DNA from: Callorhinchus milii
Taxonomy: Eukaryota
Direction: 5' to 3'
Assembly: GCF_018977255.1 (NCBI RefSeq)
Contig: NW_024704812.1
Location: 186,001 to 250,000 of the forward strand
Length of the DNA: 64,000 bases
Below, piece after piece: positions 1,465 to 62,782 of the stretch. How positions within the stretch are numbered: position 1 is the first letter of the stretch; the number at the start of each line of letters is the position of its first letter. Under the pieces are notes generated by a model, which was given only the letters and a program-made list of their open reading frames with translations, was not told the origin of the DNA and ran no database searches. Made by a program: the position numbers and the translations under genes.

Positions 1465-1527
1465 CTACTTCCTGGTGCCATTACGACGTAAATTGTGATA
1501 AATATCTTTCTGGTGCTTTCCAAGGTT
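1465..1527 (-). CDS. Gene A exon 11, [20 protein letters not shown]-stop
   Basis: 63 nt including TAG after TGTGTTTCAG acceptor; conserved in 4 copies. Confidence 0.8.
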   Translation of the reverse strand, partial: NLGKHQKDIYHNLRRNGTRK

Positions 1528-4095
1528 CTGAAACACAATGCAGATCAGACAGACCATTACTAACAACAACATTTTACACTGAACCTTTCACATCAGGAGG
1601 ACGTCCCAAGGACCTGGAGAGTCAGGGATTTGGATCTGAGCTGTGGGTTGGGATCAGGAAGGGATGGAGGGTGGGGAGGGAGGGGGTAGGAGGGTGACCA
1701 GGTTGAAGAGAAAAGTCTTGAGACAGGCCTTCAAGGAGGTGAGGGAGTGAGTGAAACCGAGGGATTGTGGGATGGAGTTCCAGAGGGTGGGGCAGAGTAA
1801 CTGAAGGCCTGACCGATGGTGGGGCAGGTGAGGCAGGGGATGTGAAGCAGGTCGGAGCCCACTGAGCAGAGGGAGAGGACAGGTTGTTAGGGGTTAGGAG
1901 GTCACAGAGGTAGTGGGGAGCAAAGCCATGGAGGGCTTTGAAGGTGAGGACCAGGATCTTGAACAACAACAACAACAACAAGATTCCATTTATAAAGCGC
2001 CTTTCACGTCAGGAGGACGTCCCAAGGCGCTGCACAGTTGGGTCATGACCCGAGCAGGGGGGAAATGGTCAGGGTGAGGGGAGGGAAGGGAGGGAGCAAG
2101 GAGGGGGGAAATGGTCAGGGTGAGGGAAGGGAAGGGAGGGAGCGAGGAGGGGGAAGAGAGTCGAGAGGGGATCTGAAGGCTCGGTCAAAGAGAAAGGTTT
2201 TGAGACCGGCCTTGAAGGAGGAGAGGGAGGAAGCGGCGAAGGCACTGGGGGATAGAGTTCCAGAGCCTGGGGGCTGAGAGGCTGAAGGCCCGACCTCCGA
2301 TGGTAGGGCGGTTGGGCGGGGGACGTGGAGCAGACCGGAGCCAGAGGAACGGAGGGTACGGGCAGGTAGGTAGGGGGATAGTAGGTTGGAGAGGTAGGAG
2401 GGAGCGAGGCCGTGGATGGCCTTGTAGGTGAGGATGAGGATCTTGAAATCAATCCTCTGGGGGATGGGGAGCAGTGGAGGCGAGCGAGGGCGAGGGCGAG
2501 GGCGAGGGCGAGGGTGGGAGTGATGTGGTCGCGGTGTCTGGTGCGGGACAGTACACGAGCTGCAGAGTTCTGAATGACCTGCAGTGTGGAGGGAGGTGGC
2601 GGGAAGGCCGGCGAGGAGAGAGTTCCCGTAGTCTAGCCTTGAGGTGACATAGGCGTGAACCAGGGTTTCGTAGTCTGGCGATGTTCCGGAGGTGATGGAA
2701 GGCGGTGCTAGTTGTGGTGCGGATGTGAGGGAGAAAGGACAGCTCAGGGTCGAACAAAACCCCGAGGTTCCTGATGGCTTTGAGAGGTGGAGAGTGCGGC
2801 CTTCGATGCTGATGCTGTCAGTGCCTGAGGTGCGGAGGCGCTGACGTGAGCCAATCAGGAGGGCCTCGGTTTTGCACACGTTGAGCTGAAGAAAGTTGTC
2901 TCTCGTCCAGGACTCGATGTCGGACAGACAGCTGTCAGGACATCGGGGGTCGTGGAGTTGAGAGTAGAGGAGGAAAGGTAGAGTTGGGTGTCATCCGCAT
3001 ACATGTGGGAGTTAACTCCATGTCTGTATGCTGTGTGTGATGGGAAGCAGTGGAGTTGGGGAGGGTGGGGCTGATGGGGGGCAGAGCCTGGGGTGGGAGA
3101 GGACAGAGCTGCAGAGTTAGTTCTGGATGATCTGCAGTTTGTAGAGGGAGGCGTTGGGAAGGCCGACAAGCAGGGAGTGGGCAAAGTCAAGCCTGTATGT
3201 GGTGAACACATGGATGAGGGCCTCGGTGGCCTGTGGTGAGAGACAGTGGCGGAGCCGGGCAATATAGTGGAGGAAGGCATAGCAGGACATGGTATGGATG
3301 AGGGGATGAAGGACAGTTGAGGGTCATAAAGGACAGAGGTGGGACAGCAAGAGACTGAGCCGGGCTGACACACTGTCCGTGTCAGCCATTTGTTTCCTCA
3401 CCATGTAAGGGCCTGAATCCTTCTGGGAGACATTGGCAGAGGAAGCCTAAAATATAAACAAACACAGTTTAGCTACTCATTAGCAATGTCGTTAGCAATA
3501 AATAATAATAACCATTGCATTTCACAAGGCAGCTTATCACGTCTTCAAAACGTCTCAAAGTGCTTCACAAGATACACGGTAAAGAGAATTGACTGTTGTT
3601 TCGTAATAATAATAATTGTTGCATTTGATATAGTGCCTTATCACGTCTTTGAGTCGTGTCAAAGAGGAGCCAATTGCCTAAGGTTTTGCTCTGTCCGGGA
3701 AACAAAACCGGATCCTTTCGCTTGAGAGGCGAGGACTCTAACCACTGAGCTACAGGACTGCACAGGACTTACTCTGACATCAATGGTCTCGTAGTGTGGT
3801 TCACCCTCTGTCTCTTGCTGTGTTTTGGCTGGAAAATAAACAACAACTTGTTTATTCAAAGGCACAGCCTCTGATGGTGGGATGGAGGGAACGAGGGACA
3901 AATAGGAGGCCGGTGTGGGGGCGGTGGGGGGTGAGCAGGTCAGAGAGGTAGGGAGGTGCCAGGGCATGAAGGGGTTTGAAAACGAGTGAGAGGATCTTGA
4001 AATCGTAGAAAATCTTGAAAATCTACAAGAGTTTGTACATTTGCTGAACCGGTGAACTTGGAGAGAAACGGAGAAGGAGGGACTGATAGAGAGAC

Positions 4096-4128
<33 letters not shown>

Positions 4129-4298
4129 TTGGTAGCGAGAGATAGGGTTAGAGCCTGACAGAAAGACAAAGAGGGAGCGATTGAAAGAGAATGGTGGAGA
4201 TGGATGGATAGAGACTGATAGAGAGTGAGATGGAGGGTGATAGAGAGGGGGGGATAGAGGCTGATAGAAAGGAGATGGTGAAATGGAGTGGGAGAGAC

Positions 4299-4354
<56 letters not shown>

Positions 4355-7300
4355 GGGGAGAGACTGATGGAGGAAGAGTGAGACGGAGAGGGTAGAGACT
4401 GATTTGAGTTTGTGACGGAGGTGGATAGAGACTAATAGAGGGAGTGTGAGACAGAAGGGAAGAGACTGATAGAGAGACATGAAGGGGGAGAGACTGGGAG
4501 TGAGAGAGAGTGAGACGGAGGGGGTAGAGACAGATAGAGAGAGACGGAGGGGTAGAGACTGACAGAGAGAGATGGAGGGGGAGAGACTGATAGTGAAAGA
4601 GAGTGAGACGGAGGGGTAGAGACTGACAGAGAGAGAGGACAGTGAGAGGGTGAGTGGCTGAGGGGGGTCTGGGCTGGTATATAAACAACAGAACATGAAG
4701 GTGAAAGGTTTTCCTGTGTATATACGGCCTCACCTTCCTTACGTTTCCTGTAAACGTACACCACAGCGAGTGTTGCAATGACCACCACAGCCACAGCCCC
4801 CACTATTGTCCCCACTATCAGGGCCACATTCACTGCGGAGAGAAACACCTTCACTGTCTCTCTATTAGATTATACTCTCGTAACATAGAGACCACAGCAC
4901 AGACCTCATGAACATCATATCAATCCTCGCATTTGATACAGCGCCTTATCACGTCGTTGTAAAGTGTCGTAACTGTATTTTGTCGGCGGAACACAGCAGC
5001 CAATTGCGCACAGCGGTGACCCACAAACAGTTGTGGATTGATTGACCAGATTCTTTGTTTTTTTGGAGGGATTATGACCCCCAGAAAGTGAACCGTCAAT
5101 TGACTAACAGCGGGTTCCTACCTACTGCTGATAAACAGAGGTGCACATCTGTGTGTGTATGTGTGTCTATGTGTGTCTGCGTGTGTGTGTGTGTGTGTGT
5201 CTGTGGGTGTTGTCTGCGGTGGGGTGTATATGTCTGTCTGTGAGTTTGTGTGTGTCTGTGACTGTGTAAGTGTGTGTGTCTGTGTGTGTGTCTGTGTGTG
5301 TGTCAACATATCATAACTTACCTCCGCCTTTCAAAGTCACGTCAAATTGGAAGAGGTTCTCTCCCATTGCGTTAGTGACATGGCATTGATATGTGCCCTG
5401 ATCGGTTGCCTGGAATTTACTGATGAGCAGTTTAGAGAAGGTTAGTCCTGAGGTGATGTTGAACTTGCCGTCAGAGCCAGTGATGGAGTTGTCTTCCTTC
5501 GACCATGTAAAGTGTGCGGGCAGCAGGCCAGGGTCTGACACCCGCACTGTGTCTGTCAGTGACACGTCTAAGGTCACATCTGCCTCCTTCCCCACTTCCA
5601 CCTGAGGCTCAGACCCTGACGCTCTCTGGGGTTTATCTGTATAACAGCACAGACGGCGTTCAGCAAAACAGCAACACAGTCACCCCAACAGTCAGTAGGA
5701 ATAATAATAATCCTCCCGTTTGATACAGCGCCTTATCACGCCATCGAGACATCTTAAATCCCATCTAAAGACCTTCCTCTTCGACCAACCGCACCTTCAG
5801 CCACCCTCCCACCCCCAACCACCACCACCCCCTGCCCTCCACCCCTCCTGACCCCAACTCCCAGCTCAGGTCCAAAAACCCAGACTATGCAGCGTCCCGG
5901 GACGTGTTTGCGACGTGAAGGGTGCTATACAAGTGTAATTTGTTATTGTCGCTGCTGTTCAGCCCTCAAGTCCTCACCAATGACTATAGAGCATTGACTG
6001 TCAGAGACAACATGGCGTCCAACACATGTGAAGATCTCTCGGGAGCTGAGCTGATCCTTTGTGATGGTGACATTCCCCTCGTTTGTCCCATTGACAATCG
6101 TCTGTCCGACCTTCAGCTGAAGGACAGTGTCTGGCACCCCACCAGCCCAGGAGCACATCAACCCACTGCTGTTCCTTTATCCGCTGCTCCGCATGTGATC
6201 TGCTGTGTGGGAGTCCCTTGAACAAGGCAAAGACAAACAGTCCAGTTATTGGCTCCACCTTGAGTTGTCCCCACCCTCGCCCGGCTCCACTGGCTCCCCA
6301 TCCCTCAGAGGATACTGTTCAAGATCCTGATCCTCAACTATCAAAGCCCTCAATGGCCTCACTTCTCCCTCCCTTCCTCTGTGACCTCCTAACCCCTGAC
6401 CAAGCTGTCCACTCCCTCCGCTCATTAGGCTCCAACCTACTCCATGTCCCTTCCCGGCCCACTCCATCATCGGCGTTCTGCCCTAATTTGCCCCATCCTA
6501 TGAAACTCCCATAACCGCTCCGCCTCGCCCTCTCCCTCGCCTTCTTCAAACCTGTGCGATCTACTGTGCCTTCGTCACCCTCCTACACCCATCTCCCTGC
6601 CCTCCAACCCTCCTGATAGCAACCCCCAGCTCAGGTGTGGGTCCCTGACTGTCCAGCGCCTTGGGACATCCTCCTGACGTGAAAGCCACTGTGTAAATGC
6701 CATGTGTTGTTATTTAGACAGTGCCAACTTTGACTGAGATCTAACTCACTGTACACGAGGATTGAAACCTTCTCCGTGCGGCTAATCGTGGTGTAATCGC
6801 TCTCCACATTGCAAGTGTAATCCCCGCTGCTTTGGAACGTGAGGCTCTCTATAGGCAGCTGTGAGGTGTTGCCGGCAATGACCGCGGTGTTATGTGTCCA
6901 CGTGTAGTTACACTCTGGGAAACATTTCGTCTGACAGTTGAGTGTCACTAAATCTCCCTCCTTCCCACAGTACTGTCCTGGGAAGAAGCTGTCACATAGC
7001 TCCAGCCCGATCACTTCAACTGTGGGTGGATCAGGGCCATCTGAAAGAAAAAGCATTAAACTATGACATAGATAGATAAATGGATGGCAGATGATAGTGT
7101 GAGAGAAACAGCCTTTTTACATGTATCACAGGAACCTGGGAATCTTGTTTGACCCTGAACTGTCCTTTCTCCCCCACATCCGCGCCATGACAGCACTGCC
7201 TACCGCCACCTCCGCAATATTGCCAGACTCCGCCACCTCCGCAATATTGCCAGACTCCGCCACTGTCTCAGCCATCAGGCTTCCGAAGCCTTCACCCACG

Positions 7301-10300
7301 CATTCATCACCTCAAGGTTTGATTACGTGAACTCCCTCCTCATCGGCCTTCCCAACTCTTCCCTTCAGAAACTGCAGATCATCCAAAACTCTGCAGCTCG
7401 TGTACTCTCGTGCACCCGGCTCCGTGACCCCATCACTCCCACCCTCGCCGACTCCACTGGCTCCCCATCCCTCAGAGGATGGAATACCAGATGCTTGTCC
7501 TCACCTTTAAGGCCATCCATGGCCTTGCCCCCTCCTATCTCTCTGACCTGCTGACTCCCTACCAACCTGCCCGCGTCCTCCGTTCAGTGGGCTCCGGCTG
7601 CTCCATGTCTCCTACCCGGCCCATCGCTGGCCGGGCTTTCAGCTTCTCTGCCCCACACTCTGGAACTCCATCCCACGGTCCCTTGGCCTCGCTTCCTCCC
7701 TGGTCTCCTTCAAGGCCGGTCTCAAGACCCTCTTCTTTATCGTGCTTTTGGTCTCCCTCCCACCTCTCTGCCTTCCCTCACCCCTCCCCCACCCCTCCCA
7801 CATGCTCGGGCCCCGACACCTGACTGTTCAGCACTTTGGAACGTTTTCCTGACGTGAAAGGCGCTCTATAAATGTAATTTTGTTGATGTTGTTGCTGTTG
7901 TTCTGGCCTTTTGTGGGTCCCTCCTGAGCGCAATTGGCTGCGCGTTTCACACATAAAATATACAGTGAATTCACTTTACAATATATTCTGTGAAGCGATT
8001 TGAGACGAGGTAAGGCACGTTTTTTGGATGTGTTAATACCTCTGGAAAAGTGATCCGGCAATCGACTAACAAGGGTTCCCGCTTACTGTTAGGCAAACAA
8101 TAGTGTGTGTGGGGGTGAATGTGGGGTGTGTGGGTGGAGTAAGGAAAGTTGCGTTAGGTGTCGTCCTGACCCGCCCGGGAATCAAACCCAGGTCCTCTCG
8201 CTTGATAAGGCGATATATCAAGTGCAAGAATGATTATTATTCTGATGATCATGACTATGATCATTATTATTGTGATTATCATTACTGTTATTGCAGCTCA
8301 GGTCACGTGAGGCTGACTTTGGGTCATGGAGTTTAAAGCGAGTCGGGGTTCCTGCTCCTGGTCCCTAAACTCCCTCTCGGGCTCAGGTGTGTGTGTTGCA
8401 GTCTAGTGAGGAGATTAGGTTTGTCTGTGGGGCCCTCTACAGTCAAGTGGCCGATTGATACTCAAATGGTGATGAGATCTTTAACCTGAACAGACAGATA
8501 GTTTAACGTCTCATCCAAACAACGGCTCTTCAATGATAATAACAATAGTGGAGTCCTGTAGCTCAGTGTTTCGAGCAAGTGAGAGTCTTGGGTTCGATTC
8601 CCAGCAGGGGGTGAATGCTTGGGCAACTTTCCTCACTCCACACGCCTGATAATAATCCCTCAAGAAAAAAAAACAATAATAAATTGGTTACTTCAATCTA
8701 TGGCTGTTTGTGGGGATGTCGCTGTGCGCAACTGTCTGCCACATTTCACCCACAAATATAGTCAATTCACTTTACAGTATATTCTGTGAAGCGTTTCAGT
8801 CGTCCAGAAGACGTGAAAAGCACTGTATCAAATGCAAGGATTATTATATTATTGATAGAGCAAAAATGTCGGCCAAGTTTCCCTACTCCCAAACACACCC
8901 TCTGTTTACTGAGCAGTAATTAGGAACCCGGTTATTAGTCGATTGGTGGGAATCAAACCAAAGTCCTCTCACTTGCGAGGTGAGGGCTCCAACCACTACA
9001 GGACCCCACTGTTTGTTCCTCTATTCACAGCATCAAACCCCAATGTAGAATATTCCAGCATTGCATTGGAGCTTCAGTCTGGACTACATGAGTTCCAAGT
9101 ACTGAGGTGAGGCCACAACCTTCTGACTTATAGAGAGCTGAGCCAGGCTGGAACAAGTAGGGATATACGTGGGCCAACTGCACTGTCCTGTTCAGCTCAC
9201 GTTGATCTGGTTTTAACACCACAGCAAATATACTCACAAGTTATCACCAGCTTCACTGGTTTGCTGCTGTCACTGTTCACCGGGTTACTGGCCGTGCAGA
9301 TAAACCCTCCACTGTCGCTCCTGTGTACGGGGCTGATTGTCAGAGTGCTATTATCTGCAGACAGTGTGTAACGTGGGGTTACAGGTAACGGGTGTCCACC
9401 CAGTGCCCAGGAATAGGTGGGGAACGATCCCATCGCTGTACATCTCAGTGTCGCTGTGTCTTCATTCTCGATAAATATCTCCTTGTCTGGACTCAGGCTG
9501 ATGCTCACATTGGACACCAGGGCTGTAAGATAAAGTGTTTTATTTCATTCAGACACAAAGCTTAACACAAAGCTGTTCTGATTCACTTTACTAACACTGC
9601 ATTGCATTTCCAACACTGTTTGTGTTATTATTTTTCCCCCTTAATTCAGACATCAAGTGCTCTGGGACGCTATCCTGCGTGAGGGGGGCTATATCAATGT
9701 AAGCTGTTGTTGTTATAATATTAATCCTTGCATTGGATACAGCGACTTATCATATCTTCGAGACATCTGAAAGCACTTCACAGAATATACTGTGTAACTT
9801 GTGGGTGAAACGCGGCTGTCAATTGAGCCCAGCGACATCCCCAGAAACAGTTGTCGATTGAGTGACCAAATTATTATTATTATTTTATTTTTTTGAAGTA
9901 ATTATTGCCCCCAGAAAACTGATCCGCCAATGGACTAACAACTGGGTTCCTACTGACTGCTGTTAAACAGAGACGTGTGCAGTAGGAAACCTGCGCATTG
10001 TTTCGCCAGGAATCAAACCCTCTCACTTGCGAGGCCAGTGCTCTAACCCCTGAGCTACAGGTCTCCGTACATAGTATGCAGTTCTGTAGTTAGTAGTATT
10101 GTTACACCAGTAGTTATGCGCTCAACAATCTGGGCCAAGAAAAGTAAAAGTTGTGGGGGATTTGGGCATTTTTGACAAATTTTGCAGAAAATGGCGGGAA
10201 GTTGATCGGGGATATTGATGAACATGTTTTCACTTTATTGATAAAAACTGAACACGAGGAAATAAGAAATATTACATTGTTGGGGAAAAATATAATTGCT

Positions 10301-13300: not shown

Positions 13301-14124
13301 CTGTAGTTATTGTTCGAGCACTCGTCTCGCAAGTGAGCAGACCCAGATTTGATCCCCGGGCGGAAGGGCGAAACGTTGGGCAGTTTCCTTACTTCACACA
13401 CACGCCTCTGTTTTTCTCGCAGTAAGTCGGAACCCGGTTGTTAACCGATTAGAGACTTTTTCGGGATAACAATTCCTTCAAAAAAGTAATAAATTGATGA
13501 CTCAAACCATGACTGTTTTTTGGCACTGCAGTGCACACTGTATAAATGGAATGATTATTAATATTATATTAATAGTTCTTGCATTTGATATAGTGCCTTA
13601 TCACGTCTTTGAGACGTCTGAACGCGCTTCATGGGCTGTACTGTAAAGTGAATTATTGTATATTTTGTGGGTGAACCCTTTCAGCCAATTGTACACAATA
13701 GCGACCCACACAGAGCCGTGGATTGAGTGACCAATTTTTTTATTTTGAAGGAATTATTATCCCCAGAGAAGCGATCCGCCAACCGACCAACAAGTGGTTC
13801 CCACTTATTGTTCGGTAAATAGAGGCGCGTGTGTGTGGAGTAAGGAAACTTACCCAACCTCTCGCCCTGTGCCGCCCGGGAATCAAACCCAGGACTCTCA
13901 CTTGCGAGGCGAGTGCTCCAACCACTGAGCTACAGGACTCCACAATTCAGAACAATTCTGTGGAAAAACGACCTCAGTGAGAGAGTGGGAAACAGGATCC
14001 CAAAGGAGACAGACGGCAGAAGCAGAAAATGTTATTTATTTCAAGATCAAATTGGATAGATTTCTGCAAGAAAATAATATCTCAGGATACAGTGTATAGA
14101 CACACATACACAGACACACAGTCG

Positions 14125-52800: not shown

Positions 52801-55800
52801 TGTGACCTTAGACGTGTCACTGACAGACACAGTGCGGGTGTCAGACCCTGGCCTGCTGCCCGCACACTTTACATGGTCGAAGGAAGACAACTCCATCACT
52901 GGCTCTGACGACAAGTTCAACATCACCTCAGGACTAACCTTCTCTAAACTGCTCATCAGTAAATTCCAGGCAACCGATCAGGGCACATATCAATGCCGTG
53001 TCACTAACGCAATGGGAGAGAACTCTTCCAATTTGACGTGACTTTGAAAGGCGGAGGTAAGTTATGATATGTTGACACACACACAGACACACACACAGAC
53101 ACACACACTTACACAGTCACAGACACACACAAACTCACAGACAGACATATACACCCCACCGCAGACAACACCCACAGACACACACACACACACACACACG
53201 CAGACACACATAGACACACATACACACACAGATGTGCACCTCTGTTTATCAGCAGTAGGTAGGAACCCGCTGTTAGTCAATTGACGGTTCACTTTCTGGG
53301 GTCATAATCCCTCCAAAAAAAAACAAAGAATCTGGTCAATCAATCCACGACTGTTTGTGGGTCACCGCTGTGCGCAATTGGCTGCTGTGTTCCGCCGACA
53401 AAATACAGTTACGACACTTTACAACGACGTGATAAGGCGCTGTATCAAATGCGAGGATTGATATGATGTTCATGAGGTCTGTGCTGTGGTCTCTATGTTA
53501 CGAGAGTATAATCTAATAGAGAGACAGTGAAGGTGTTTCTCTCCGCAGTGAATGTGGCCCTGATAGTGGGGACAATAGTGGGGGCTGTGGCTGTGGTGGT
53601 CATTGCAACACTCGCTGTGGTGTACGTTTACAGGAAACGTAAGGAAGGTGAGGCCGTATATACACAGGAAAACCTTTCACCTTCATGTTCTGTAGTTTAT
53701 ATACCAGCCCAGACCCCCCTCAGCCACTCACCCTCTCACTGCCCTCTCTCTCTGCCAGTCTCTACCCCTCCGTCTCTCTCTATCTGTCTCTAGCCCCTCC
53801 GTCTCACTCTCCCTCACTATCAGTCTCTCCCCCTTCATCTCTCTCTATCAGTCTCTCCCCCTCCATCTCTCTCTGTCAGTCTCTACCCCTCCGTCTCTCT
53901 CTATAATAATAATAATAATAATCCTTGCATTTGATATAGCGCTTTTCATGTCGGGAGGACGTCCCAAAGCGCTTCACAGAACACACTGTAAAGTGAATTG
54001 ATTGTATATTTGTGGGCGAACGCGGCAGCCAATTGCGCACAGCAATGTCCCACAAACAGTCGTAGATTGGAAATGACCAATTTTTTATTATTGTTTATTT
54101 TTGGGGGGGGGGATTATTATTAGGCGTGTGGAGTAAGGAAACTTGCCCAAGGTTTCGCCCTGACTGGAATTGAACTCAGGTCTCTCGCTTGTAAAGTGAG
54201 TGCTCTAACCACTGAGCTACAGGACTCCACTCTATCTGTCTCTACCCACTCCGTCTCACTCTCTCTCACTCCCAGTCTCTCCCCTTTCATGTCTCTCTAT
54301 CAGTCTCTTCCCTTCTGTCTCACACTCCCTCTATTAGTCTCTATCCACCTCCGTCACAAACTCAATCAGTCTCTACCCTCTCCGTCTCACTCTTCCTCCA
54401 TCAGTCTCTCCCCCTCTATCTCTCTCTCTCTCTCTATCAGTCTCTCCCGCTCCATTTCACCATCTCCTTTCTATCAGCCTCTATCCCCCCTCTCTATCAC
54501 CCTCCATCTCACTCTCTATCAGTCTCTATCCATCCATCTCCACCTCTCTCTTTCAATCGCTCCCTCTTTGTCTTTCTGTCAGGCTTTAACCCTATCTCTC
54601 ACTACCAATCTCTCTCTCTCTCTCTGTCTCTCTATCAGTGCCTCCTCTCCGTTTCTCCCCAAGTTCACCGGTTCAGCAAATGTACAAACTCTTGTATATT
54701 TTCAAGATTTTCTACGATTTCAAGATCCTCTCACTCGTTTTGAAACCCCTTCATGCCCTGGCACCTCCCTACCTCTCTGACCTGCTCACCCCCCACCGCC
54801 CCCACACCGGCCTCCTATTTGTCCCTCGTTCCCTCCATCCCACCATCAGAGGCTGTGCCTTTGAATAAACAAGTTGTTGTTTATTTTCCAGCCAAAACAC
54901 AGCAAGAGACAGAGGGTGAACCACACTACGAGACCATTGATGTCAGAGTAAGTCCTGTGCAGTCCTGTAGCTCAGTGGTTAGAGTCCTCGCCTCTCAAGC
55001 GAGAGGATCCGGTTTTGTTTCCCGGACAGGGCAAAACCTTAGGCAATTGGCTCCCCTTTGATACGACTCAAAGACGTGATAAGGCACTGTATCAAATGCA
55101 ACGATTATTATTGTTATGAAACCACACAGTCACTACTCTTTACCGTGTATCCTGTGAAGCGCTTTGAGATGTTACGAAGACGTGATAAGGCACTGTATGA
55201 AATGCAATGGTTATTATTATTTATTGCTAACGACATTGCTAATGAGTAGCTAAACTGTGTTTGGTTATATTTTAGGCTTCCTCTGCCAATGTCTCCCAGA
55301 AGGATTCAGGCCCTTACATGGTGAGGAAACAAATGGCTGACACGGACAGTGTGTCAGCCCGGCTCAGTCTCTTGCTGTCCCACCTCTGTCCTTTACGACC
55401 CTAAACTGTCCTTCATCCCCTCATCCATACCATGACCTGCTATGCCTTCCCCACCTCCGCCATATTGCCCGGCTCCGCCACTGTCTCTCACCGCAGACCA
55501 ACGAGAACCTCATCCATGTGTTCACCACAAACAGGCTTGACTTTGCCCACTCCCTGCTTGTCGGCCTTCCCAACGTCTCCCTCTACAAACTGCAGATCAT
55601 CCAGAACTAACTCTGCAGCTCCCCATACCCCCTAACAACCTGTCCGCTCTCTCTGCTCAGCGGGCTCCGGCCTGCTTCACATCCCCCGCCTCACCTGCCC
55701 CACCATCGGTTGGGCCTTCAGTTACTCTGCCCCACCCTCTGGAACTCCATCCCACAGTCCCTCCATCCCACCCCATCACTCCCTCACCTCCTTCAAGGCC

Positions 55801-56055
55801 TGTCACAAGACTTTCCTCTCAACCTGGTCACCTTCCTAACCCTACTCGCCACCATCCACCCCGTCCTGATCCCAACCCACAGCTCAGATCCAAATCCCTG
55901 ACTGTCCAGGTCCTTGGGACGTCCTCCTGATGTGAAAGGTTCAGTGTAAAATGTTGTTAGTAATGGTCTGTCCGATCTGCATTGTGTTTCAGGACCTTGG
56001 AAAGCACCAAAAAGATATTTATCACAATTTACGTCGTAATGGCACCAGGAAGTAG
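43789..56055 (+). CDS. Gene D: 11-exon paralog (L-V-A1-A2-B-C-D-TM-ITAM); 1-nt deletion at the end of exon 7
   Basis: all 11 exons with canonical boundaries; ~688 aa if the indel at ~53023 is corrected. Confidence 0.85.
45071..45394 (+). CDS. Gene D IgV exon
   Basis: 324 nt open, Cys-free. Confidence 0.9.
46613..46897 (+). CDS. Gene D A1 Ig exon
   Basis: 285 nt open, ends KPVALTIQ. Confidence 0.9.
47055..47990. repeat. GT/CT-rich compound microsatellite (similar tracts 10340-10800, 29430-30098, 43940-44600, 62945-63840)
   Basis: degenerate (GT)n and GTGTCTCT units. Confidence 0.9.
48850..49134 (+). CDS. Gene D A2 Ig exon
   Basis: 285 nt open. Confidence 0.9.
51338..51628 (+). CDS. Gene D B-type Ig exon
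   Basis: 291 nt; translation identical to gene A exon 5. Confidence 0.9.
52162..52401 (+). CDS. Gene D VSIG10-like Ig exon
   Basis: 240 nt open. Confidence 0.9.
52743..53056 (+). CDS. Gene D membrane-proximal Ig exon, 1-nt deletion giving TGA at 53039-53041
   Basis: 314 nt versus 315. Confidence 0.8.
53549..53647 (+). CDS. Gene D transmembrane exon
   Basis: 99 nt. Confidence 0.9.
53905..54229 (-). mobile_element. Full-length tRNA-derived SINE with (ATT)n tail and 6-bp TSD; gene D only
   Basis: GGAGTCCTGTAGCTCAGTGG A-box head, GAGTTCAATTCC B-box, CTCTAT duplicated at 53899-53904 and 54230-54235. Confidence 0.9.
54892..54947 (+). CDS. Gene D cytoplasmic exon 1 ([10 protein letters not shown])
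   Basis: 56 nt. Confidence 0.8.
55276..55320 (+). CDS. Gene D cytoplasmic exon 2 (..DSGPYM)
   Basis: 45 nt. Confidence 0.8.
55993..56055 (+). CDS. Gene D last exon (DL..IYHNL..stop)
   Basis: 63 nt including TAG. Confidence 0.8.
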   Translation, partial: DLGKHQKDIYHNLRRNGTRK

Positions 56056-59000
56056 ATAGCTGTGACAACGTAGATCGATTTCAAGATCCTTTCAATCATC
56101 TACAAATCTCTTCAGGCTCTGGCACCTCCCTACCTCTCTCTCCGACCTGCTGACCCCCCAACCCACTACCCACTGCCTCCTCTCGGCTGCCTCCGGCCTC
56201 CTGCGTGTCCCTCGTGCCCTCTGATCCATCATGGGGGGTCGTATTGTCAGACTTTGGAGCTCTCTCCACCGATCCTCCGCCTTTCCCCCTTTCCTCCCCT
56301 CTCCTATCCTTCCCCCTCTTTTAGATCAAGACTGAAAATCTTTCTCTTTGACCATGCTCACGGTCACCTTCTGCCTGTCTCTCCCCTCCAACTGGCTCTG
56401 CGTCAGGCTCCACCACTCCGAGACGCTACCCTCATAAAGGGCGCTGTGTAAATACAAGTTGTTGTTGTTGTGACTTATCGGCTCACTGAGAAGTTAATGT
56501 TATTTACCAGGAGTTCAGTATTCAGGGTGAAACGTAGNNNNNNNNNNNNNNNNNNNNNNNNNNNNNNNNNNNNNNNNNNNNNNNNNNNNNNNNNNNNNNN
56601 NNNNNNNNNNNNNNNNNNNNNNNNNNNNNNNNNNNNNNNNNNNNNNNNNNNNNNNNNNNNNNNNNNNACACGCGTTTGCCTCTGTTTACCAAGCAGTAAG
56701 TAGGACCTCGCTTGTTAGTCAGCAGCCAATTAATTGCACGTGCACAGAGGTGCCCCACAAACAGTTGCGGATTGAAGTGACCAATTTGTCTTTTTTGCAA
56801 GAATTACTATTATTACTATTATTATTAGTGAGAGACCTGAGTTCGATTCCTGGCCGGGCGAGGCCTTGGACAAGTTTCCTTACTCCACACCCTGATAATA
56901 ATCCCTCAAAAAAAACAATAATAAATTGGTCATTCCAATCCACGACTGTTTGTGGGACACTGCTGTGCGTAATTGGCCTCCGCATTTCGCCCACAAATTT
57001 ATGCAGTCAATTCACTATTCTGTGAAGCGCTTTGAGACGTCCAGAAGATGTAAGGATTATTATTATTATTATTATTATTACCATTATTATCCCAGCCAAC
57101 TGCAGGCAAGGCACAGGAATCTGAGGCCACGAGCCAGCTTTATGAGTGAGCTAATCTTACAATGGCTTTCACTTCCACATGAAATTAGTGCTTCAAACCA
57201 ACTGAAACCTTTGAGCTGTACAGCGATTAACTCCAGACATTCCTAACTCACAGCTCACTGAGCTCCGGGTGGTTAACTGTCAGGGGTTTTATCGTTGGAG
57301 TCCTGCAGCTCAGTGGTTACAGCACTCGCCTCACAAGCGAGAGGACCTTTGTTCGATTCCTGGGCGCGTCGGGGCATAATGTCCTTATTTCACACGCACA
57401 CGCCTCTGTTTACACTGCAGTAAGTAAGAATACGGTTGTTAGTCGACTGGTGGATTACTTTTCTGGGGGTAATAATCCTTACAAAAAATAATATATTGGC
57501 TACTTCGATCCACGACTGTTTGTGGGACACTGCTGTGCGCAATTGACTGCCGCGTTTCGTCCACAAATATACAGTCAATTCACTTCACAGTATATCCTGT
57601 GAAGAGCTCTGAGATCTCGAAGACGTGTTAAGGCGCTATATCAAATGCAAGGATTATTATTATTATTATGGAATCACAGAATCTTACAACACAGGCGGAG
57701 GCCATTCGGCCCATCGTGTCTGTGCCGGTTCTTTGAAAGAGCTGCCCAATCAGTCCCACTCCCCCGCTCCTACCCCGTATCTCTGCATATTTTCCTTTTC
57801 AAGTCCCTGTCCAATTCCCTTTTGAAAGCTACTATGGAATCTGATTTCATAAGCCTTTCCGGCAGTGCGTTCCAGACCATGACAAATCGCTGCGTAAATA
57901 TCCCCTCGTCTCCCCTCTGGTTCTTTTCCCAATTATATTAAATCTATGTTCTCCCGTTACTGACCCACACACCAGTGGAAACAGTTTCTCCCTATTTACT
58001 CTATCAAAACCCCTCATCATTTTGAACACCTATATTAGATCTCCCCTATCCTCCTCTTGCTCTAAGGAGAACAATCTCAGCTTCTCTCGTCTCTCCACAT
58101 TTCTCTCTTGTTATCTTCTTCTGGTAATAAAATTCCTTTGGTTTGACCGCAATAATTCCATCTTGTGTCAGAGGTTAGGAGTGTGGTGGGGTGCACACTA
58201 ACCCTGACAGTCACTACACAGTCACTGAACACACAGTCACTACACTTTACAGTAGCATATCCTGCTAAGCTCTTTGAGCCACTTCAATGACATGATAATT
58301 GGTTGCCATGTTTTGGCTACAAAATACACAGTCACTCCACTCTACAGTCTGTTCTATGAATGAGATGTCACGACGACATGATAAGGCTCGATATCAAATG
58401 CAATGATTATTATGTTCATGTCAGGAGGACGTCCCAAGGCGCTGGACAGTCAGAGGTTTATACCCAGGATGGGGGTTGGGATCAGGAAGGGTAGAGGACG
58501 GGGAGGGGGAAGGTAGGATGGTGACCAAAGGTGTGATGGTCGAAGAGGAAGATCTTGAAACTGGCCTTGAAGGAGGCGAGAGAGGGGGTGGAGAGGCTGA
58601 AGGCCCGACAGCCAATTGTGGGGGAGGCGGGTGGGGGATGTGAAGCCGGCCGGAGGCTACTGAGTGGAGAGAGTGGACAGGTTGGTAGGGGGTTAGTTAG
58701 GAGTTCACAGAGGTGGGGGGGAGTGAGGCCATGGAGTGCTTCGAAGGTGAGGACCAGGAGCTTGAACTGTACTCTCTCAGTGATGGGGAGTCAGTGGAGC
58801 CGGGCGAAGATGGGGGTGATGGGGTAACGAAACATGACCCTGAACTCATCCCTAAACAGTCACTGAACACATCACAAAACACACACTAAACTTGTGTCTC
58901 AGTGAGTATCTTGTGGAGTCCCTGTAGCTCAGGGGTTAGAGCGCTCGCCTCGCAAGCGAAAGGATCTGGGTTCGATTCCCAGGTGTGTCAGGGCAAAACC

Positions 59001-59724: not shown

Positions 59725-59788
59725 ATGTGGTGGTTTCCAGCCGCGAGGATGTTGGTGGCTGCTCTGCTCATTCTGGTCACTAATTTGG
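59725..59788 (+). CDS. Gene E exon 1, signal peptide
   Basis: 64 nt. Confidence 0.8.
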
Positions 59789-62782
59789 GTGAGTTACTGG
59801 TAACAACATAAGCAAAGGTCCATCTCGTTCATCTCCCACCATCCTGGCAGTCGCTAGACATGTCGTGTCACAAACTATATACTGTGTATGTGTGTCTCTC
59901 TGTCTGTGTCTACTTCTGTGTGTCTGTGTGTGTGTCTATATACTGTATCCTGAGATATTATTTTCTTGCAGAAATCTATCCAATTTGATCTTGAAATAAA
60001 TGACATTTTCTGCTTCCGCCGTCTGTCTCCTTCGGGATCCTGTTTCCCACTCTCTCACTGAGGTCGTGTTTCCACAGAATTGTTCTGAATTGTGGAGTCC
60101 TGTAGCTCAGTGGTTGGAGCACTCGCCTCGCAAGTGAGAGTCCTGGGTTTGATTCCCGGGCGGCACAGGGCGAGAGGTTGGGCAAGTTTCCTTACTCCAC
60201 ACACACGCGCCTCTATTTACCGAACAATAAGTACGAACCACTTGTTGGTCGGTTGGCGGATCGCTTCTCTGGGGATAATAATTCGGTCAAAATAAAAAAA
60301 ATCCACGGCTCTGTGGGTCGCTGTTGTGTGCAATTGGCTGCCAAGTTTCACCCACAAAATATACAATAATTCACTTTACAGTACATCGTGTGAAGCGCTG
60401 TCAGACGTCTCAAAGACGTGATAAGGCACTGTATCAAATGCAAGGACTATTAATATAATATTAATAATTATTCATTTATACAGTGTGCACTGTAGTGCCC
60501 ACGAACAGTCATTGTTTGAGTCATCAATTTATTACTTTTTTGAAGGAATTGTTATCCCGAAAAAGCCTCTAATCGGTTAACAACCGGGTTCCTACTTACT
60601 GCGAAGCAAACAGAGGTGTGTGTGTGAAGTAAGGAAACTGCCCAACATTTCGCCCTTCCGCCCGGGGATCAAACCCGGGTCCTCTCGTTTGTGAGGCGAG
60701 TGCTCGAACCATTGAGCTACAGGATTATTATTAATAGTATTATTACACTGTGAGATTTGGTGATTGACTGTTGTGTGTGTTATGTATTACAGAGCAGGTG
60801 GGAGCTTTCAGTCTGACCGTCACTGAGAGTCAGATAGAAGCCACAGCCGGACAATCTGTGTACTTCCTGGTAATGCCCAGTGAACAGGGAAGTTTTAGCA
60901 TATCATGGAAAGTCAACACCAGCTCCACAATCGCAGCAGCACAGGGAACATCAGTGAAGTACTATGGAGACTACCAGGGTCGGGCTGAGCTTTACCCCAA
61001 CAATGCCACTCTACGTCTGGACACAGTGACTCCGACTGATTCCGGTTCGTACTCAGTGACTGTGATTGAGTTAAACCACGGATCAGCCACAGCGGCTTTA
61101 CAACTGCGTGTTCACAGTGAGTAAACAACAACAACAACTTGCATTTACACCGCACCCCTCACGTGGGGTAGCGTCCGGGAGCGCTTGATAGGGGAAGAAT
61201 CTGACCCCGAGCCGCTGGGAGAGGGAGGGGGGAGGTGACGGTAAACACAATCAAAAAGGAAGGATATTAGGTGGGATTTGAAGGTGGGGAACGAGAGGGT
61301 GAGACGGAGGGATTGACAGGGAGAGAGTGACAGAGTTTCAGGGCGTAGCAGCTGAAAATACAGCCACCAATGATGGAGCGGAGGGGCCGAGGGACAAACA
61401 GGAGGGTGTGATGGGGGCACAGAGTTTAGTGTGTGTGAGATAGGGAGCCCTGTGGAGTCCTGAAGGGTATTAGTTAGAGCAGGATGGTCAACTGGTGGCC
61501 TGTGGGCCACATCCGGCCCCCCGGACCGATTTCATTTTATTCATTCAGCTCAGTGTGGTCCAACAGGCGGTACGTGGGCTGTCAGCTGCCCGGAGGTGAT
61601 TTTGTGCAGCCGGCGACCATTTGCAATGTTTCAACTTCCCCAACCCCCCTCCCTCCCTCCCTCCCTGGTAAATGTCCTCACAGGGCAGTGGCAGGAGGCG
61701 GCGTTTGTGAGAATCCAGCGAGCAGAGCCCTTACTGCAGTCTGTCAGGAAGGTAAATGAGTCTCTTACCAACTGTGTCCTTGGGCTCCTGCCACTGCAGA
61801 TTGGGAGAGAGTGATTGGGAGAGAGAGAGGGGAGAGAGAGGGGGGAGGAGAGAGGGAGGCATGAAAGATAAGGGGGAGAGAGGGGTAAAGAGAAGGGGGA
61901 GAGAGTTGGAAAGAAAAGGCAAGAGACAGTGAGAGGGGGAGAGGGAGAGGGGATGAGAGAGTGGGGTGGGAGAGTGAGTGGGGGGGAGAGAGGAGGAGAG
62001 AGAGGAGCAGGATCACACTTGCTCTGCCTTCCTGATAGGCTGCAGTAAAGGCTCTGGTCGTTGGGTCTTCCCAACCATCAGCTCCTGCCGTTGCCCAGGG
62101 AGGGAGGGAGGGAGGGAGTGGAAATGGCCTCAGGTTGGATGTGGCTCGTGGATCTTTGACAAATAGGGGAATCCGGCCCACGGCAGCCACCCTGCTTCAG
62201 AGCATCGGTGAGAGCAGGGTGGGCCAACTGGTGGCCCATGTGCCGCATCCGGCCCCCGGGCCATTCAATTTCATTCATTCAGCCAATAAACCTGGACTGT
62301 GAGCTCCAAGAGTGGGGCTTTAAACCGTAACATTGTGCTACCAAATGAGCCAGACTGAGACCTGAATAAACAGTGAATCATAACAAACAGCGTCAGAAAT
62401 AAAGTGTAGGGTTCAGCAAAGTGACTCTGAACAGGTTTGTGTCAGTGAATTGAATCTGAACAAGTTTCTGAATGAAATGAAACGCGTTATCTTACAGCTC
62501 TGCTGTCCAATGTGAGCATCAGCCTGAGTCCAGACAAGGAGATATTTATCGAGAACGAAGACACAGTGACACTGAGGTGTACAGCGATGGGATCGTTCCC
62601 CACCTATTCCTGGGCACTGGATGGACACCCGTTACCTGTAACCCCACGTTACACACTGTCTGCAGATAATAGCACTCTGACAATCAGCCCCGTACACAGG
62701 AGCGACAGTGGAGGGTTTATCTGTACGGCCAGTAACCTGGTGGGCAGTGACAGCAGCAAACCAGTGGCCCTAACCATACAAG
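59725..62782 (+). CDS. Gene E, 5' part (leader, IgV, A1); continues beyond the window
   Basis: three intact exons; the following intron matches gene D intron 3 up to the window edge. Confidence 0.85.
60793..61116 (+). CDS. Gene E IgV exon
   Basis: 324 nt open; ..[21 protein letters not shown]. Confidence 0.9.
62214..62260 (+). mobile_element. hAT/Charlie-like DNA transposon terminus (also 61478, 46327, 30919; minus at 11872-11920, 27472-27520)
   Basis: CAGGGTGGGCCAACTGGTGGCCC..GGGCCGCATCCGGCCC resembles hAT MITE ends. Confidence 0.55.
62498..62782 (+). CDS. Gene E A1 Ig exon
   Basis: 285 nt open. Confidence 0.9.

What the first reader, a model, noticed from the sequence alone, without database searches (positions are those of the whole stretch)
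1465..62782. Cluster of ITAM-bearing CEACAM/VSIG10L-like Ig receptors: candidate diversifying activating immune-receptor family
Seen: five paralogs with leader, Cys-free IgV, 5-6 Ig domains, uncharged TM with GxxxG (GTIVG) and a 3-tyrosine tail; all four complete copies end in an ITAM and none has an ITIM. Established: Cys-free N domains and YGPD A/B junctions are CEACAM hallmarks, and mammalian CEACAM3 is an ITAM decoy receptor for bacterial adhesins. Inference: the combination of a CEACAM-like front, two VSIG10/VSIG10L-like proximal domains and an intrinsic ITAM, expanded on a ~16-kb unit in a probable chondrichthyan, may be an undescribed pathogen-recognition family, possibly the activating arm of a paired-receptor system.
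Basis: partly seen in the sequence, partly recalled or inferred. Interest (0 to 1): 0.85.

Follow-up and report, generated by a model that had tools for sequence, protein, structure and literature searches.

The report
Elephant-shark CEACAM-like ITAM receptor gene cluster
The window holds five tandem copies of an elephant-shark (Callorhinchus milii) CEACAM-like immune-receptor gene with a built-in activating (ITAM) tail and a fast-diversifying tip domain; it extends a known kind of receptor family into cartilaginous fish and is not a new kind of system.

Summary
The window is Callorhinchus milii unplaced scaffold MU249885.1, positions 186001-250000. It carries five copies of a ~16-kb gene unit: A and B on the minus strand, C, D and E on the plus strand. 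Each copy encodes a leader, a cysteine-free IgV (N) domain, CEACAM-type A/B domains joined by YGPD, two membrane-proximal Ig domains, an uncharged GxxxG transmembrane helix, and a tail ending in the ITAM YM|[13 protein letters not shown], which a phase-0 intron splits.

There are caveats. All four full-length copies carry 1-bp homopolymer frameshifts as assembled, most likely consensus errors. B and C have no leader exon, and their head-to-head join is a true scaffold gap.

The A/B domains match human CEA best (6e-61). The Ig5 domain belongs to a rare type shared with VSIG10L2, shark orthologues and a frog CEACAM1-like protein. The N exons show omega of about 4 (LRT 11.1), with 24 of 28 variable sites on the C-C'-C''/F-G strands. 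A C. milii paralogue on another contig has a 93-98% identical ectodomain but an unrelated DxYAxV tail, and its Mustelus orthologue has canonical ITIMs. This supports the paired-receptor reading.

NCBI already annotates these genes. CEACAM paired receptors are known in mammals and Xenopus. Verdict: new member of a known kind, moderate interest.

The parts
1465..14487 (-). Gene A, 688-aa type (N-A1-A2-B2-Ig5-Ig6-TM-tail). Exons: L 14424-14487, N 12904-13224, A1 11350-11634, A2 9238-9522, B2 6750-7040, Ig5 5978-6216 (239 nt, -1 frameshift in a G run), Ig6 5322-5636, TM 4734-4832, cy2 3773-3828, cy3 3402-3446, cy4+stop 1465-1527.
18150..29000 (-). Gene B, 785-aa type with an extra B1 domain; the leader exon is missing at the scaffold gap. 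Exons: N 28677-29000, A1 26950-27234, B1 26030-26320, A2 24983-25267, B2 22786-23075 (-1), Ig5 22008-22249 (+2), Ig6 21343-21656 (about 10 one-base indels), TM 20817-20915 (two compensating indels), cy2 19705-19760, cy3 18885-18929, cy4+stop 18150-18212.
30273..40093 (+). Gene C, 785-aa type; the leader exon is missing at the scaffold gap. Exons: N 30273-30593 (four indels), A1 31757-32039 (-2), B1 32673-32962 (-1), A2 33723-34007, B2 35914-36204, Ig5 36739-36978, Ig6 37322-37636, TM 38125-38223, cy2 38930-38985, cy3 39311-39355, cy4+stop 40031-40093.
43789..56055 (+). Gene D, 688-aa type. Exons: L 43789-43852, N 45071-45394, A1 46613-46897, A2 48850-49134, B2 51338-51628, Ig5 52162-52401, Ig6 52743-53056 (314 nt, -1 frameshift), TM 53549-53647, cy2 54892-54947, cy3 55276-55320, cy4+stop 55993-56055.
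59725..62782 (+). Gene E, 5' part only. Exons L 59725-59788, N 60793-61116 and A1 62498-62782 are all intact; the rest lies beyond the window end.
45071..45394 (+). N-domain (Cys-free IgV) exon of D, the example used for the structure model. The equivalent exons are A 12904-13224, B 28677-29000, C 30273-30593 and E 60793-61116. This is the exon under positive selection.
55276..55320 (+). Exon cy3 of D ([15 protein letters not shown]). It carries the first ITAM tyrosine and ends after 'YM' at a phase-0 intron. The same exon is at A 3402-3446, B 18885-18929 and C 39311-39355.
55993..56055 (+). Exon cy4 of D ([20 protein letters not shown] plus stop). It completes YMDL and carries YHNL, the second ITAM tyrosine and a YxN motif. 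The same exon is at A 1465-1527 (NL instead of DL), B 18150-18212 and C 40031-40093.
54892..54947 (+). Exon cy2 of D ([19 protein letters not shown]), carrying the membrane-proximal YETI tyrosine. The same exon is at A 3773-3828, B 19705-19760 and C 38930-38985; B and C read YYETI.
53549..53647 (+). Transmembrane exon of D ([33 protein letters not shown]), uncharged with GTIVG. It is 100% identical in A (4734-4832) and C (38125-38223).
30099..30128 (.). True scaffold gap, N in the public record as well. It is the point where gene orientation switches, and the leader exons of B and C are absent on either side.
17537..17666 (.). Masked run, 484 nt 3' of B's stop and outside coding sequence. The public record has 130 letters here with colinear flanks. 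I did not read them.
40575..40725 (.). N run 482 nt 3' of C's stop, at the same position in the unit. Its flanks are colinear with the unmasked unit A. It is outside coding sequence.
56538..56667 (.). N run 483 nt 3' of D's stop, at the same position in the unit. Its flanks are colinear with unit A. It is outside coding sequence.

Best explanation
The window is part of a large tandem array, on a scaffold of at least 260 kb, of Callorhinchus milii genes for type-I membrane receptors of the CEACAM / VSIG10L branch of the Ig superfamily. Each gene encodes a signal peptide, a disulfide-less IgV 'N' domain, one or two A-B sets of CEACAM-type C2 domains, two membrane-proximal Ig domains (a rare four-Cys 'CSWxGGxP' type, then an I-set), an uncharged TM helix and a 62-residue tail with YETI plus a canonical ITAM core.

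Shown: the gene structure, the domain relationships, the ITAM and its phase-0 split, the excess of amino-acid-changing substitutions in the N exon on the C-C'-C''/F-G strands, and a same-ectodomain paralogue with a different, ITIM-related tail.

Inferred: the N domain binds a ligand through its GFCC'C'' face. Clustering lets Src-family kinases phosphorylate the ITAM, which recruits Syk-type tandem-SH2 kinases (YHNL could also bind Grb2), so the receptor activates the cell without an adaptor chain. The array would be the activating side of a CEACAM1/CEACAM3-like paired system, diversified under pressure from a changing ligand, possibly microbial. The frameshifts in the window copies are most likely long-read consensus errors and not pseudogenisation.
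For: Identity and structure:
- Exon models with canonical splice sites and phase 1 are.
- An uninterrupted 12-exon, 785-aa ORF of the same family lies in the next unit of the scaffold.
- Pfam finds only Ig-type domains.

Domain relationships:
- The A/B domains are best matched by human CEA (6e-61) and CEACAM1 (1e-34), including the YGPD junction.
- The N domain's best sequence hits are CEACAM1 N domains. Its model has pLDDT 92.7 and is a 9-10-strand IgV.
- The Ig5 type is rare and shared with VSIG10L2, shark orthologues and a frog CEACAM1-like protein that also has an ITAM-like tail.

ITAM:
- The ITAM YMDL-x7-YHNL is present in all four tails and split after 'YM' by a phase-0 intron.
- That split, and YxN motifs, are described as characteristic of CEACAM ITAM exons (PMC5112662).

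Selection:
- dN/dS exceeds 1 in all 10 N-exon pairs.
- Omega is 4.0, with 2dlnL = 11.1 against omega = 1. B2 gives 0.75 and Ig5 1.25, neither significant.
- 24 of 28 variable sites lie on the C-C'-C''/F-G segments, Fisher p = 7e-6.

Partner:
- P0006 is 93-98% identical through A2-Ig6, but 53% in the TM, and its tail is unrelated (DFYAQV, DLYAKV).
- The Mustelus orthologue has VEYAQI and VIYAQV.

Frameshifts as errors:
- All are 1-bp homopolymer indels with almost no accompanying substitutions.
- A sister unit matches C's exons with 0 mismatches in 10 of 11 exons but carries different, non-shared indels.
Against: - There is no expression, protein or ligand evidence of any kind.
- Every full-length copy in the window is frameshifted as assembled, and B is heavily damaged, so some copies may be real pseudogenes.
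- The scaffold is unplaced and highly repetitive. Near-identical units could be haplotypes or false duplications, so the true copy number is unknown.
- Six distinct intact N sequences in a diploid imply at least three loci (inference).
- The acidic residue of the full ITAM consensus (D/E at -3) is at -4.
- Omega was estimated from only six sequences, and gene conversion among paralogues can distort it.
- The strand segments in the Fisher test were chosen after seeing the data.
- The structural search does not single out CEACAM: PD-L1, CD155 and TIGIT IgV domains rank above CEACAM N domains.
- The partner's motifs in C. milii have D at -2, not a canonical ITIM. Its N domain is unknown and it lies on another contig.
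- Synteny with the CEACAM locus could not be examined.
Confidence: 0.68

Rival explanations
1. These are cell-cell adhesion or self-recognition molecules with endogenous, homophilic or heterophilic ligands, as for CEACAM1 adhesion or the poorly known VSIG10L2. On this reading the N-domain diversity reflects co-evolution with host partners or relaxed constraint after duplication, not microbes, and the tyrosines act mainly as YxxPhi sorting or endocytosis signals.
For: CEACAM N domains use the same GFCC'C'' face for homophilic binding (established knowledge; PMC5112662 background). The colinear relative VSIG10L2 has no known immune role; papers mention it only as an inner-ear hair-cell marker. 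A2, B2, Ig5 and Ig6 give dN/dS of 0.5 to about 1, which is weak constraint overall.
Against: Relaxed constraint gives omega near 1, not 4, and would not confine changes to one sheet of one domain. A canonical YxxL-x7-YxxL with the ITAM-typical exon split is conserved without any change in cy3 across all four copies. A same-ectodomain partner with a different tail fits immune paired receptors.
Confidence: 0.2
2. The array is largely dead or artefactual: a pseudogene graveyard and/or false duplications and a mis-oriented contig in an unplaced, poorly polished scaffold. On this reading 'five paralogues' overstates what the animal has.
For: Eight of 45 exons are frameshifted. The orientation switch coincides with a true assembly gap and removes two leader exons. 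Unit C and a unit about 74 kb away differ almost only by indels. NCBI had to build chimeric models across units.
Against: The indels are in homopolymers, are not shared between near-identical units, and come without stop-creating substitutions or splice-site loss. An intact 785-aa ORF exists next door. Copies differ by 1.7-6.6% substitutions. There are six different intact N sequences whose differences are mostly non-synonymous, which sequencing error cannot produce.
Confidence: 0.1
3. The genes are lineage-specific co-orthologues of VSIG10L/VSIG10L2 and not members of the CEACAM family, and the CEACAM resemblance reflects only shared descent of the two families.
For: Human VSIG10L2 aligns colinearly across A-YGPD-B-Ig5, at 28% identity over 324 aa and E = 1e-26. 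The Ig5 type is otherwise found mainly in proteins named VSIG10L2. NCBI names one model VSIG10-like.
Against: The N domain lacks the canonical cysteines that the human VSIG10L2 V domain keeps. There is no fn3 domain, whereas VSIG10L2 has one at 614-690. The A-B pair scores about 80-85 bits against CEA and CEACAM1, versus 101 bits for VSIG10L2 over an alignment that also includes Ig5. The ITAM/ITIM tails and their exon split are CEACAM-like (PMC5112662). Frog and shark relatives with the same proximal domains are annotated CEACAM1-like or CEACAM5-like.
Confidence: 0.15

Closest known systems
Mammalian CEACAM1-related paired receptors (CEACAM1 with ITIM/ITSM; CEACAM3 with an ITAM-like motif; CEACAM4 with a consensus ITAM)
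   Same: Both have a disulfide-less N-terminal IgV, A/B C2 domains joined by YGPD and phase-1 ectodomain exons. Both carry an ITAM within the receptor's own tail instead of on an adaptor chain. Both form tandem multigene clusters with a rapidly evolving N domain and a same-ectodomain partner with a different tail (PMC2832619, PMC7026191).
   Different: The chimaera proteins have two extra membrane-proximal Ig domains (Ig5, Ig6) that mammalian CEACAMs lack. They have 6-7 Ig domains where CEACAM3 and CEACAM4 have one. Their ITAM core is fully canonical with a YxN second tyrosine. Sequence identity is only about 25% in N. No ligand, expression or synteny data exist.
Xenopus Ceacam families, group 1 and group 2 paired receptors (Zimmermann & Kammerer 2016, PMC5112662)
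   Same: Both are large uninterrupted clusters containing ITAM/ITAM-like and ITIM members with similar N domains. In both, the YxxL of the ITAM is split by a phase-0 intron, YxN motifs are present, and the N exon shows dN/dS above 1. The paper states that group 1 N domains are closest to cartilaginous and bony fish CEACAM N domains. A frog CEACAM1-like protein (P0052) shares the A-Ig5-Ig6-TM arrangement and an ITAM-like tail.
   Different: This is a different lineage with its own expansion. Here only the ITAM type is seen in the 64-kb window, and the ITIM-type partner is on a separate contig. Orthology to any Xenopus gene was not tested.
VSIG10L2 (human P0DP72 / NP_001352006; teleost 'VSIG10-like 2')
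   Same: The ectodomains are colinear through A, YGPD, B and the rare CxWxGGxP Ig5-type domain.
   Different: VSIG10L2 keeps the V-domain cysteines, repeats the Ig5 type, has an fn3 domain and has no ITAM.
Elasmobranch orthologues: Pristiophorus japonicus 'CEACAM5-like' (P0005) and Mustelus asterias 'CD22-like' (P0024)
   Same: They have the same N-A(n)-B-Ig5-Ig6-TM architecture, at 36-58% identity domain by domain.
   Different: Their tails carry repeated D/VxYAxV motifs, which are canonical ITIMs in Mustelus, and no ITAM. The ITAM tail type was found only in C. milii.

Membership tests
CEACAM family | N-terminal IgV-like domain without the canonical intradomain disulfide | tested here: met
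   There is no Cys in any of the five N exons. The fold is an IgV at pLDDT 92.7. The best sequence hits are CEACAM1 N domains, but only weakly at 9e-5.
CEACAM family | IgC2-like A and B domains most similar to CEACAM A/B, joined by YGPD | tested here: met
   Human CEA scores 6e-61 and CEACAM1 1.4e-34, with the alignment running through 'YGPD'. Caveat: VSIG10L2 has the same junction.
CEACAM family | Separate leader exon, one exon per Ig domain, phase-1 introns | tested here: met
   This exon pattern is generic for IgSF genes and so only weakly diagnostic.
CEACAM family | Cytoplasmic ITAM or ITIM encoded by small exons, with the ITAM's YxxL split by a phase-0 intron | tested here: met
   The split is YM|DL between cy3 and cy4, with both exons phase 0. 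The criterion is taken from PMC5112662.
CEACAM family | Location in the conserved CEACAM locus (LIPE, BCL3, XRCC1, PAFAH1B3 and CNFN as neighbours) | not testable with these tools
   The window and all fetched loci of the unplaced scaffold contain only family members.
CEACAM family | Structural match of the N domain specifically to CEACAM N domains | tested here: inconclusive
   In Foldseek, PD-L1, CD155 and TIGIT IgV domains rank first (TM 0.81-0.87). CEACAM1, CEACAM6 and CEA N domains rank 23-43 (TM 0.72-0.75) but have the highest identity at 24-26%.
ITAM-bearing activating receptor | D/E-x-x-Y-x-x-L/I-x(6-8)-Y-x-x-L/I in the cytoplasmic tail | tested here: met
   The core YMDL-x7-YHNL is present in B, C and D, and YMNL-x7-YHNL in A. 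The acidic residue sits at -4 (DSGPY) and not at -3.
ITAM-bearing activating receptor | Tyrosine phosphorylation and Syk/ZAP-70 recruitment on cross-linking | not testable with these tools
   This needs an experiment.
Paired activating/inhibitory receptors | A partner with a closely similar ectodomain and a tail of opposite sign | tested here: inconclusive
   P0006 is 98% (A2), 93% (B2), 95% (Ig5) and 94% (Ig6) identical, but 53% in the TM, with an unrelated tail. Its motifs DFYAQV and DLYAKV have D at -2, whereas the Mustelus orthologue has canonical VEYAQI and VIYAQV. The partner's N domain and its map position are unknown.
VSIG10L2 orthologue | V domain with canonical Cys, repeated Ig5-type domains, and an fn3 domain before the TM | tested here: not met
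   The chimaera proteins have no fn3, while human VSIG10L2 has fn3 at 614-690. Their N domain is Cys-free and they have a single Ig5-type domain.

The most novel reading that the evidence does not exclude
The chondrichthyan genes preserve an ancestral architecture (N-A-B-Ig5-Ig6) from which both the CEACAM and the VSIG10L/VSIG10L2 families descend. On this reading, an ITAM/ITIM paired CEACAM system with ligand-driven, possibly pathogen-driven, diversification of the N-domain binding face already operated at the base of jawed vertebrates. The chimaera would have independently expanded the activating arm into a large array.
Probability: 0.3. Interest if true: 0.6.

Novelty: new member of a known kind. 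Interest (0 to 1): 0.4.

Why it matters
CEACAM paired receptors are a textbook case of host-pathogen arms races in mammals and have been traced to amphibians. For cartilaginous fish, the papers I could search cite only a skate EST. A holocephalan array with a canonical in-chain ITAM, an ITIM-related partner and omega of about 4 confined to the N-domain binding face would push this receptor logic back about 450 million years. It would also give a concrete set of N domains to screen for ligands. The shared A-YGPD-B-Ig5 layout offers a testable link between the CEACAM family and the uncharacterised VSIG10L2 family. On the practical side, it flags a scaffold where indel errors have produced chimeric public gene models, including one named 'titin-like'.

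Tried and rejected
- Word-index searches on Ig5-to-tail and on TM+tail found only C. milii proteins. These say little about other species because the method needs shared 5-mers.
- Look-ups of P0006 and P0003 found no contig, so the partner gene's structure, N domain and location stay unknown. DNA for L003 was not held.
- Foldseek on the N-domain model was not family-specific.
- The PDB search on Ig5-Ig6 gave only generic I-set hits such as titin, DSCAM and ROBO.
- Pfam found nothing in the repeat-derived ORFs.
- I first took locus L001 for another assembly of the same genes. Searches showed it is another part of the same scaffold, so the comparison is between sister units and not between assemblies.
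- I considered that the A/B versus C/D mirror arrangement was a fold-back assembly artefact. I rejected that as a full explanation because the arms differ by 1.7-3.6% substitutions. The join itself remains unverified.
- I did not read or fill any masked or gap letters.

Full report
WHAT IS THERE

The window has 49% G+C, a CpG observed/expected ratio of 0.48, and four N runs. Six-frame ORFs and self-BLAST show one gene unit of about 16 kb repeated five times. Copies A and B lie on the minus strand and copies C, D and E on the plus strand.

I located every exon by its splice-site-flanked open frame. The A/D type has 11 exons: leader (64 nt), N (IgV, 321/324 nt), A1, A2 (285 nt each), B2 (291), Ig5 (240), Ig6 (315), TM (99), cy2 (56), cy3 (45) and cy4 (60 plus stop). 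This gives 688 aa. The B/C type has an extra B-type exon (B1) between A1 and A2, giving 785 aa. All borders are AG/GT, ectodomain exons are phase 1, and the tyrosine of YGPD is assembled across the A2/B2 splice. E is cut by the window end after A1. Leader-to-leader spacing from D to E is 15,936 bp.

The N domain has no cysteine in any copy. The TM segment, [25 protein letters not shown], is uncharged and contains GTIVG. The tail reads RKRKE / [11 protein letters not shown](H/Y)YETIDVR / [15 protein letters not shown] / (D/N)[19 protein letters not shown]. It contains YxxL-x7-YxxL and no (S/I/V/L)xYxx(I/V/L) motif. The first YxxL is split after 'YM' by a phase-0 intron, and the second is a YxN motif. 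Zimmermann and Kammerer describe both points as typical of CEACAM ITAM exons (PMC5112662).

ORIGIN AND THE N RUNS

The best protein hits are Callorhinchus milii RefSeq models named CEACAM1-like, CEACAM5-like, VSIG10-like and 'titin-like, partial'. Loci fetched for those models are 100% identical to the window. This places the window at GCA_018977255.1 scaffold MU249885.1, positions 186001-250000, on an unplaced scaffold of 259,846 bp.

The four N runs behave as follows:
- 30099-30128 is N in the public record too, so it is a true scaffold join. It lies between the N exons of B (…29000, minus) and C (30273…, plus), exactly where both leader exons should be. The leader is found only upstream of A, D and E. 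B and C are therefore 5'-truncated. The switch of gene orientation, with everything to the left on one strand and C-D-E on the other, rests on scaffolding alone.
- 17537-17666 corresponds to exactly 130 letters in the public record, with colinear flanks. It was masked on purpose and I did not read it.
- 17537-17666, 40575-40725 and 56538-56667 all sit about 483 nt 3' of the stop codons of B, C and D, at the same point of the unit. Their flanks are colinear with unit A.

No exon or reading frame crosses any N run.

FRAMESHIFTS

None of the four full-length copies is open as assembled:
- A has a -1 in Ig5.
- D has a -1 in Ig6.
- B is broken in B2, Ig5 and Ig6, and has two compensating indels in the TM exon.
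- C is broken in N, A1 and B1.

Every lesion is a 1-bp change in a homopolymer, with 0-4 substitutions in the same exon. A sister unit about 74 kb away in the same scaffold matches C's exons with zero mismatches in 10 of 11 exons. It is intact where C is broken, and broken in Ig5, TM, cy2 and cy4, where C is intact. The unit just left of the window gives an uninterrupted 12-exon, 785-aa ORF with all the features above.

I conclude that the frameshifts are most likely consensus errors of a long-read assembly in a multicopy region. Real decay of some copies, B above all, is not excluded. These errors explain why the public gene models skip exons and run across two units.

The copies are not simple duplicates of one another. 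Substitution divergence is 1.7% for B versus C, 3.6% for A versus D, and 4.4-6.6% for the other pairs.

FAMILY RELATIONSHIPS

Pfam sees only Ig-type domains. The per-domain results are:
- A1-A2-B2 matches human CEA at 6e-61 and CEACAM1 at 1.4e-34. The alignments run through '…VITYGPDPPT' against '…VLYGPDAPT'.
- The N domain's best sequence hits are CEACAM1 N domains, but only weakly at 9e-5.
- The N-domain AlphaFold model is confident (pLDDT 92.7; strands A, A', B, C, C', C'', D, E, F, G). Foldseek, however, ranks PD-L1, CD155 and TIGIT above CEACAM N domains, so the structure does not decide family membership.
- Ig5-Ig6 hit only generic I-set proteins in the PDB.
- An exhaustive search with the Ig5 exon found just 20 proteins among 1.8 billion. 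Those outside chondrichthyans are mostly named VSIG10L2 (teleosts, primates), and one is a frog CEACAM1-like protein.

Human VSIG10L2 aligns colinearly with the chimaera protein through A, YGPD, B and Ig5, at 28% identity over 324 aa and E = 1e-26. It differs in keeping the V-domain cysteines, repeating the Ig5 type and carrying an fn3 domain.

The frog protein P0052 has A-Ig5-Ig6-TM and an ITAM-like tail. The sawshark (P0005) and Mustelus (P0024) orthologues share the whole N-A(n)-B-Ig5-Ig6-TM layout at 36-58% identity.

The 'CEACAM front, VSIG10L back' is therefore real. It looks like one old architecture shared by fish and amphibian CEACAM-like genes and VSIG10L2, and not a recent fusion.

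DIVERSIFICATION

Nei-Gojobori counts give dN/dS above 1 for all ten N-exon pairs. Examples are A-B with 25.3 non-synonymous against 1.7 synonymous changes, and B-C with 15 against 0. A1, B2 and Ig5 give 0.2-1.1, and the tail exons are almost invariant.

I used six distinct intact N exons from the window and the neighbouring units. A codon model then gives omega = 4.0, and fixing omega at 1 costs 2dlnL = 11.1 (1 df, p of about 0.001). B2 gives 0.75 and Ig5 1.25, neither significant. Ig6 has too few changes to judge.

On the model's strand map, 24 of 28 variable positions fall in the C-C'-C'' and F-G segments (53 residues) and 4 fall in the other 54 residues. Fisher's test gives p = 7e-6, with segments chosen after seeing the data. 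That sheet is the ligand and adhesin face of CEACAM N domains (established knowledge). Sequencing error cannot produce this pattern. Gene conversion and the small sample could still inflate it.

A PARTNER WITH A DIFFERENT TAIL

P0006, a C. milii model on a separate 16.7-kb contig, is 98%, 93%, 95% and 94% identical to the window genes in A2, B2, Ig5 and Ig6. It is only 53% identical in the TM segment, and its tail is unrelated, carrying DFYAQV and DLYAKV.

The same tail type occurs in the sawshark orthologue (four D[LM]Y[AS]xV motifs) and in Mustelus, where two motifs are canonical ITIMs (VEYAQI, VIYAQV). Frog and teleost CEACAM1-like tails have IQYAEV, LNYADV and similar motifs.

The ITAM tail type was found only in C. 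milii (limited sensitivity). A differently built Mustelus CEACAM5-like protein does carry YMELQLQDQSVYNEL.

This is the signature of paired receptors. It suggests that the ITIM-type form is the older one and the chimaera ITAM array a derived activating arm. The partner's N domain and its map position are unknown.

HOW IT MOST LIKELY WORKS (INFERENCE)

The proposed sequence is:
1. A ligand binds the variable GFCC'C'' face of N.
2. Clustering brings the tails together.
3. Src-family kinases phosphorylate YMDL and YHNL.
4. Syk-type tandem-SH2 kinases dock, and the cell is activated or engulfs the particle.

This follows what is known for CEACAM3 and CEACAM4 (PMC7026191). YETI and the YxN site could add Src-SH2 and Grb2 contacts (my knowledge, untested). 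The uncharged TM helix fits signalling through the receptor's own tail, with no need for a charged-TM adaptor.

COMPARISON AND NOVELTY

Published work already covers much of this ground:
- CEACAM homologues 'from cartilaginous fish to humans', some with an ITAM, are claimed on the basis of skate ESTs (PMC3628338, PMC4079198).
- Paired CEACAMs with positively selected N exons are described in mammals and Xenopus (PMC2832619, PMC5112662).

I found no paper on the C. milii cluster. VSIG10L2 is essentially uncharacterised.

This is therefore a new member of a known kind. It is already machine-annotated, and the new details are the shared proximal-domain architecture, the canonical in-chain ITAM and the omega of about 4 on the binding face.

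LIMITS

There is no expression, ligand, synteny or accurate copy-number information. The unplaced scaffold may contain haplotypic or false duplicates.

Noticed in passing
window 3687-3758, 19619-19690, 39000-39071, 54962-55033 and 12 further sites: Rfam reports 16 tRNA-like matches at 29-44 bits. They sit at the same intronic or intergenic positions in each unit, for example directly after exon cy2, so they are heads of tRNA-derived SINEs and not tRNA genes.
   Followed up: partly
window about 1894-3105 (minus strand, last intron of gene A): Gene A alone has a 1.2-kb insertion here: its cy3-cy4 intron is 1.9 kb, against 0.67 kb in B, C and D. The ORFs contain a 'YADD' reverse-transcriptase-like motif but give no Pfam hit. 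It is probably a decayed LINE fragment.
   Followed up: partly
window 29400-30098, 43900-44735 (intron 1); 10100-10730, 47000-48000, 62900-63900 (A1-A2 intron): Long TG/CA-rich low-complexity arrays produce spurious 'CVCVSL…' and 'THTHR…' ORFs of up to 170 aa.
   Followed up: no
window 22570-23208 vs 25825-26453 (and 32539-33174 vs 35781-36426): There is an internal duplication of the B-type exon region at 87-88% identity. This explains the extra B1 domain of the 785-aa genes B and C.
   Followed up: partly
window 28484-29061, 30217-30800, 45008-45589, 60730-61331: The N exon and its immediate flanks are the most diverged part of the unit between two N lineages: '…[10 protein letters not shown]…' in B and D, and '…ELSHG(S/T)ATAA…' in A, C and E. 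Identity there is 85-87%, against 92-98% elsewhere.
   Followed up: partly
L001 10001-34714; L002 10001-35240; L003 10001-17208 (same scaffold, outside or overlapping the window): The public RefSeq models are chimeric. P0001 (593 aa) and P0004 (529 aa) each span about 25 kb, i.e. two units, and skip frameshifted exons. P0007 is named 'titin-like, partial'. P0002 gives gene B an artificial first exon across the scaffold gap.
   Followed up: yes
joined L002+L001 38883-50460 (scaffold about 168,663-157,086, just left of the window): An uninterrupted 12-exon, 785-aa ORF of the same family, with leader, Cys-free N, A1-B1-A2-B2-Ig5-Ig6, TM and ITAM tail, is present in the assembly.
   Followed up: yes
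protein P0006 (C. milii, separate 16.7-kb contig): The end of its tail ('…QILRIYTLKSTNP…', twice) reads like the +1 frame of the repeat 'DSQDLYAKVDKSNP'. That model probably also contains an indel error and hides further DLYAKV repeats. This is my reading of the protein only; I did not see the DNA.
   Followed up: no
window cy3/cy4 exons (e.g. 55276-55320, 55993-56055): From memory, the chimaera [19 protein letters not shown] resembles the human CEACAM3 ITAM-like motif in the pattern Y..L.KH...IY. This is an untested lead for homology of the tail exons.
   Followed up: no
window B2 exons (e.g. 51338-51628): The B-type domain has six cysteines (…[13 protein letters not shown]…[13 protein letters not shown]…YTCN…), against two in human CEACAM and VSIG10L2 B domains. 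The extra cysteines are shared with the sawshark and Mustelus orthologues, which suggests additional disulfides specific to chondrichthyans.
   Followed up: no
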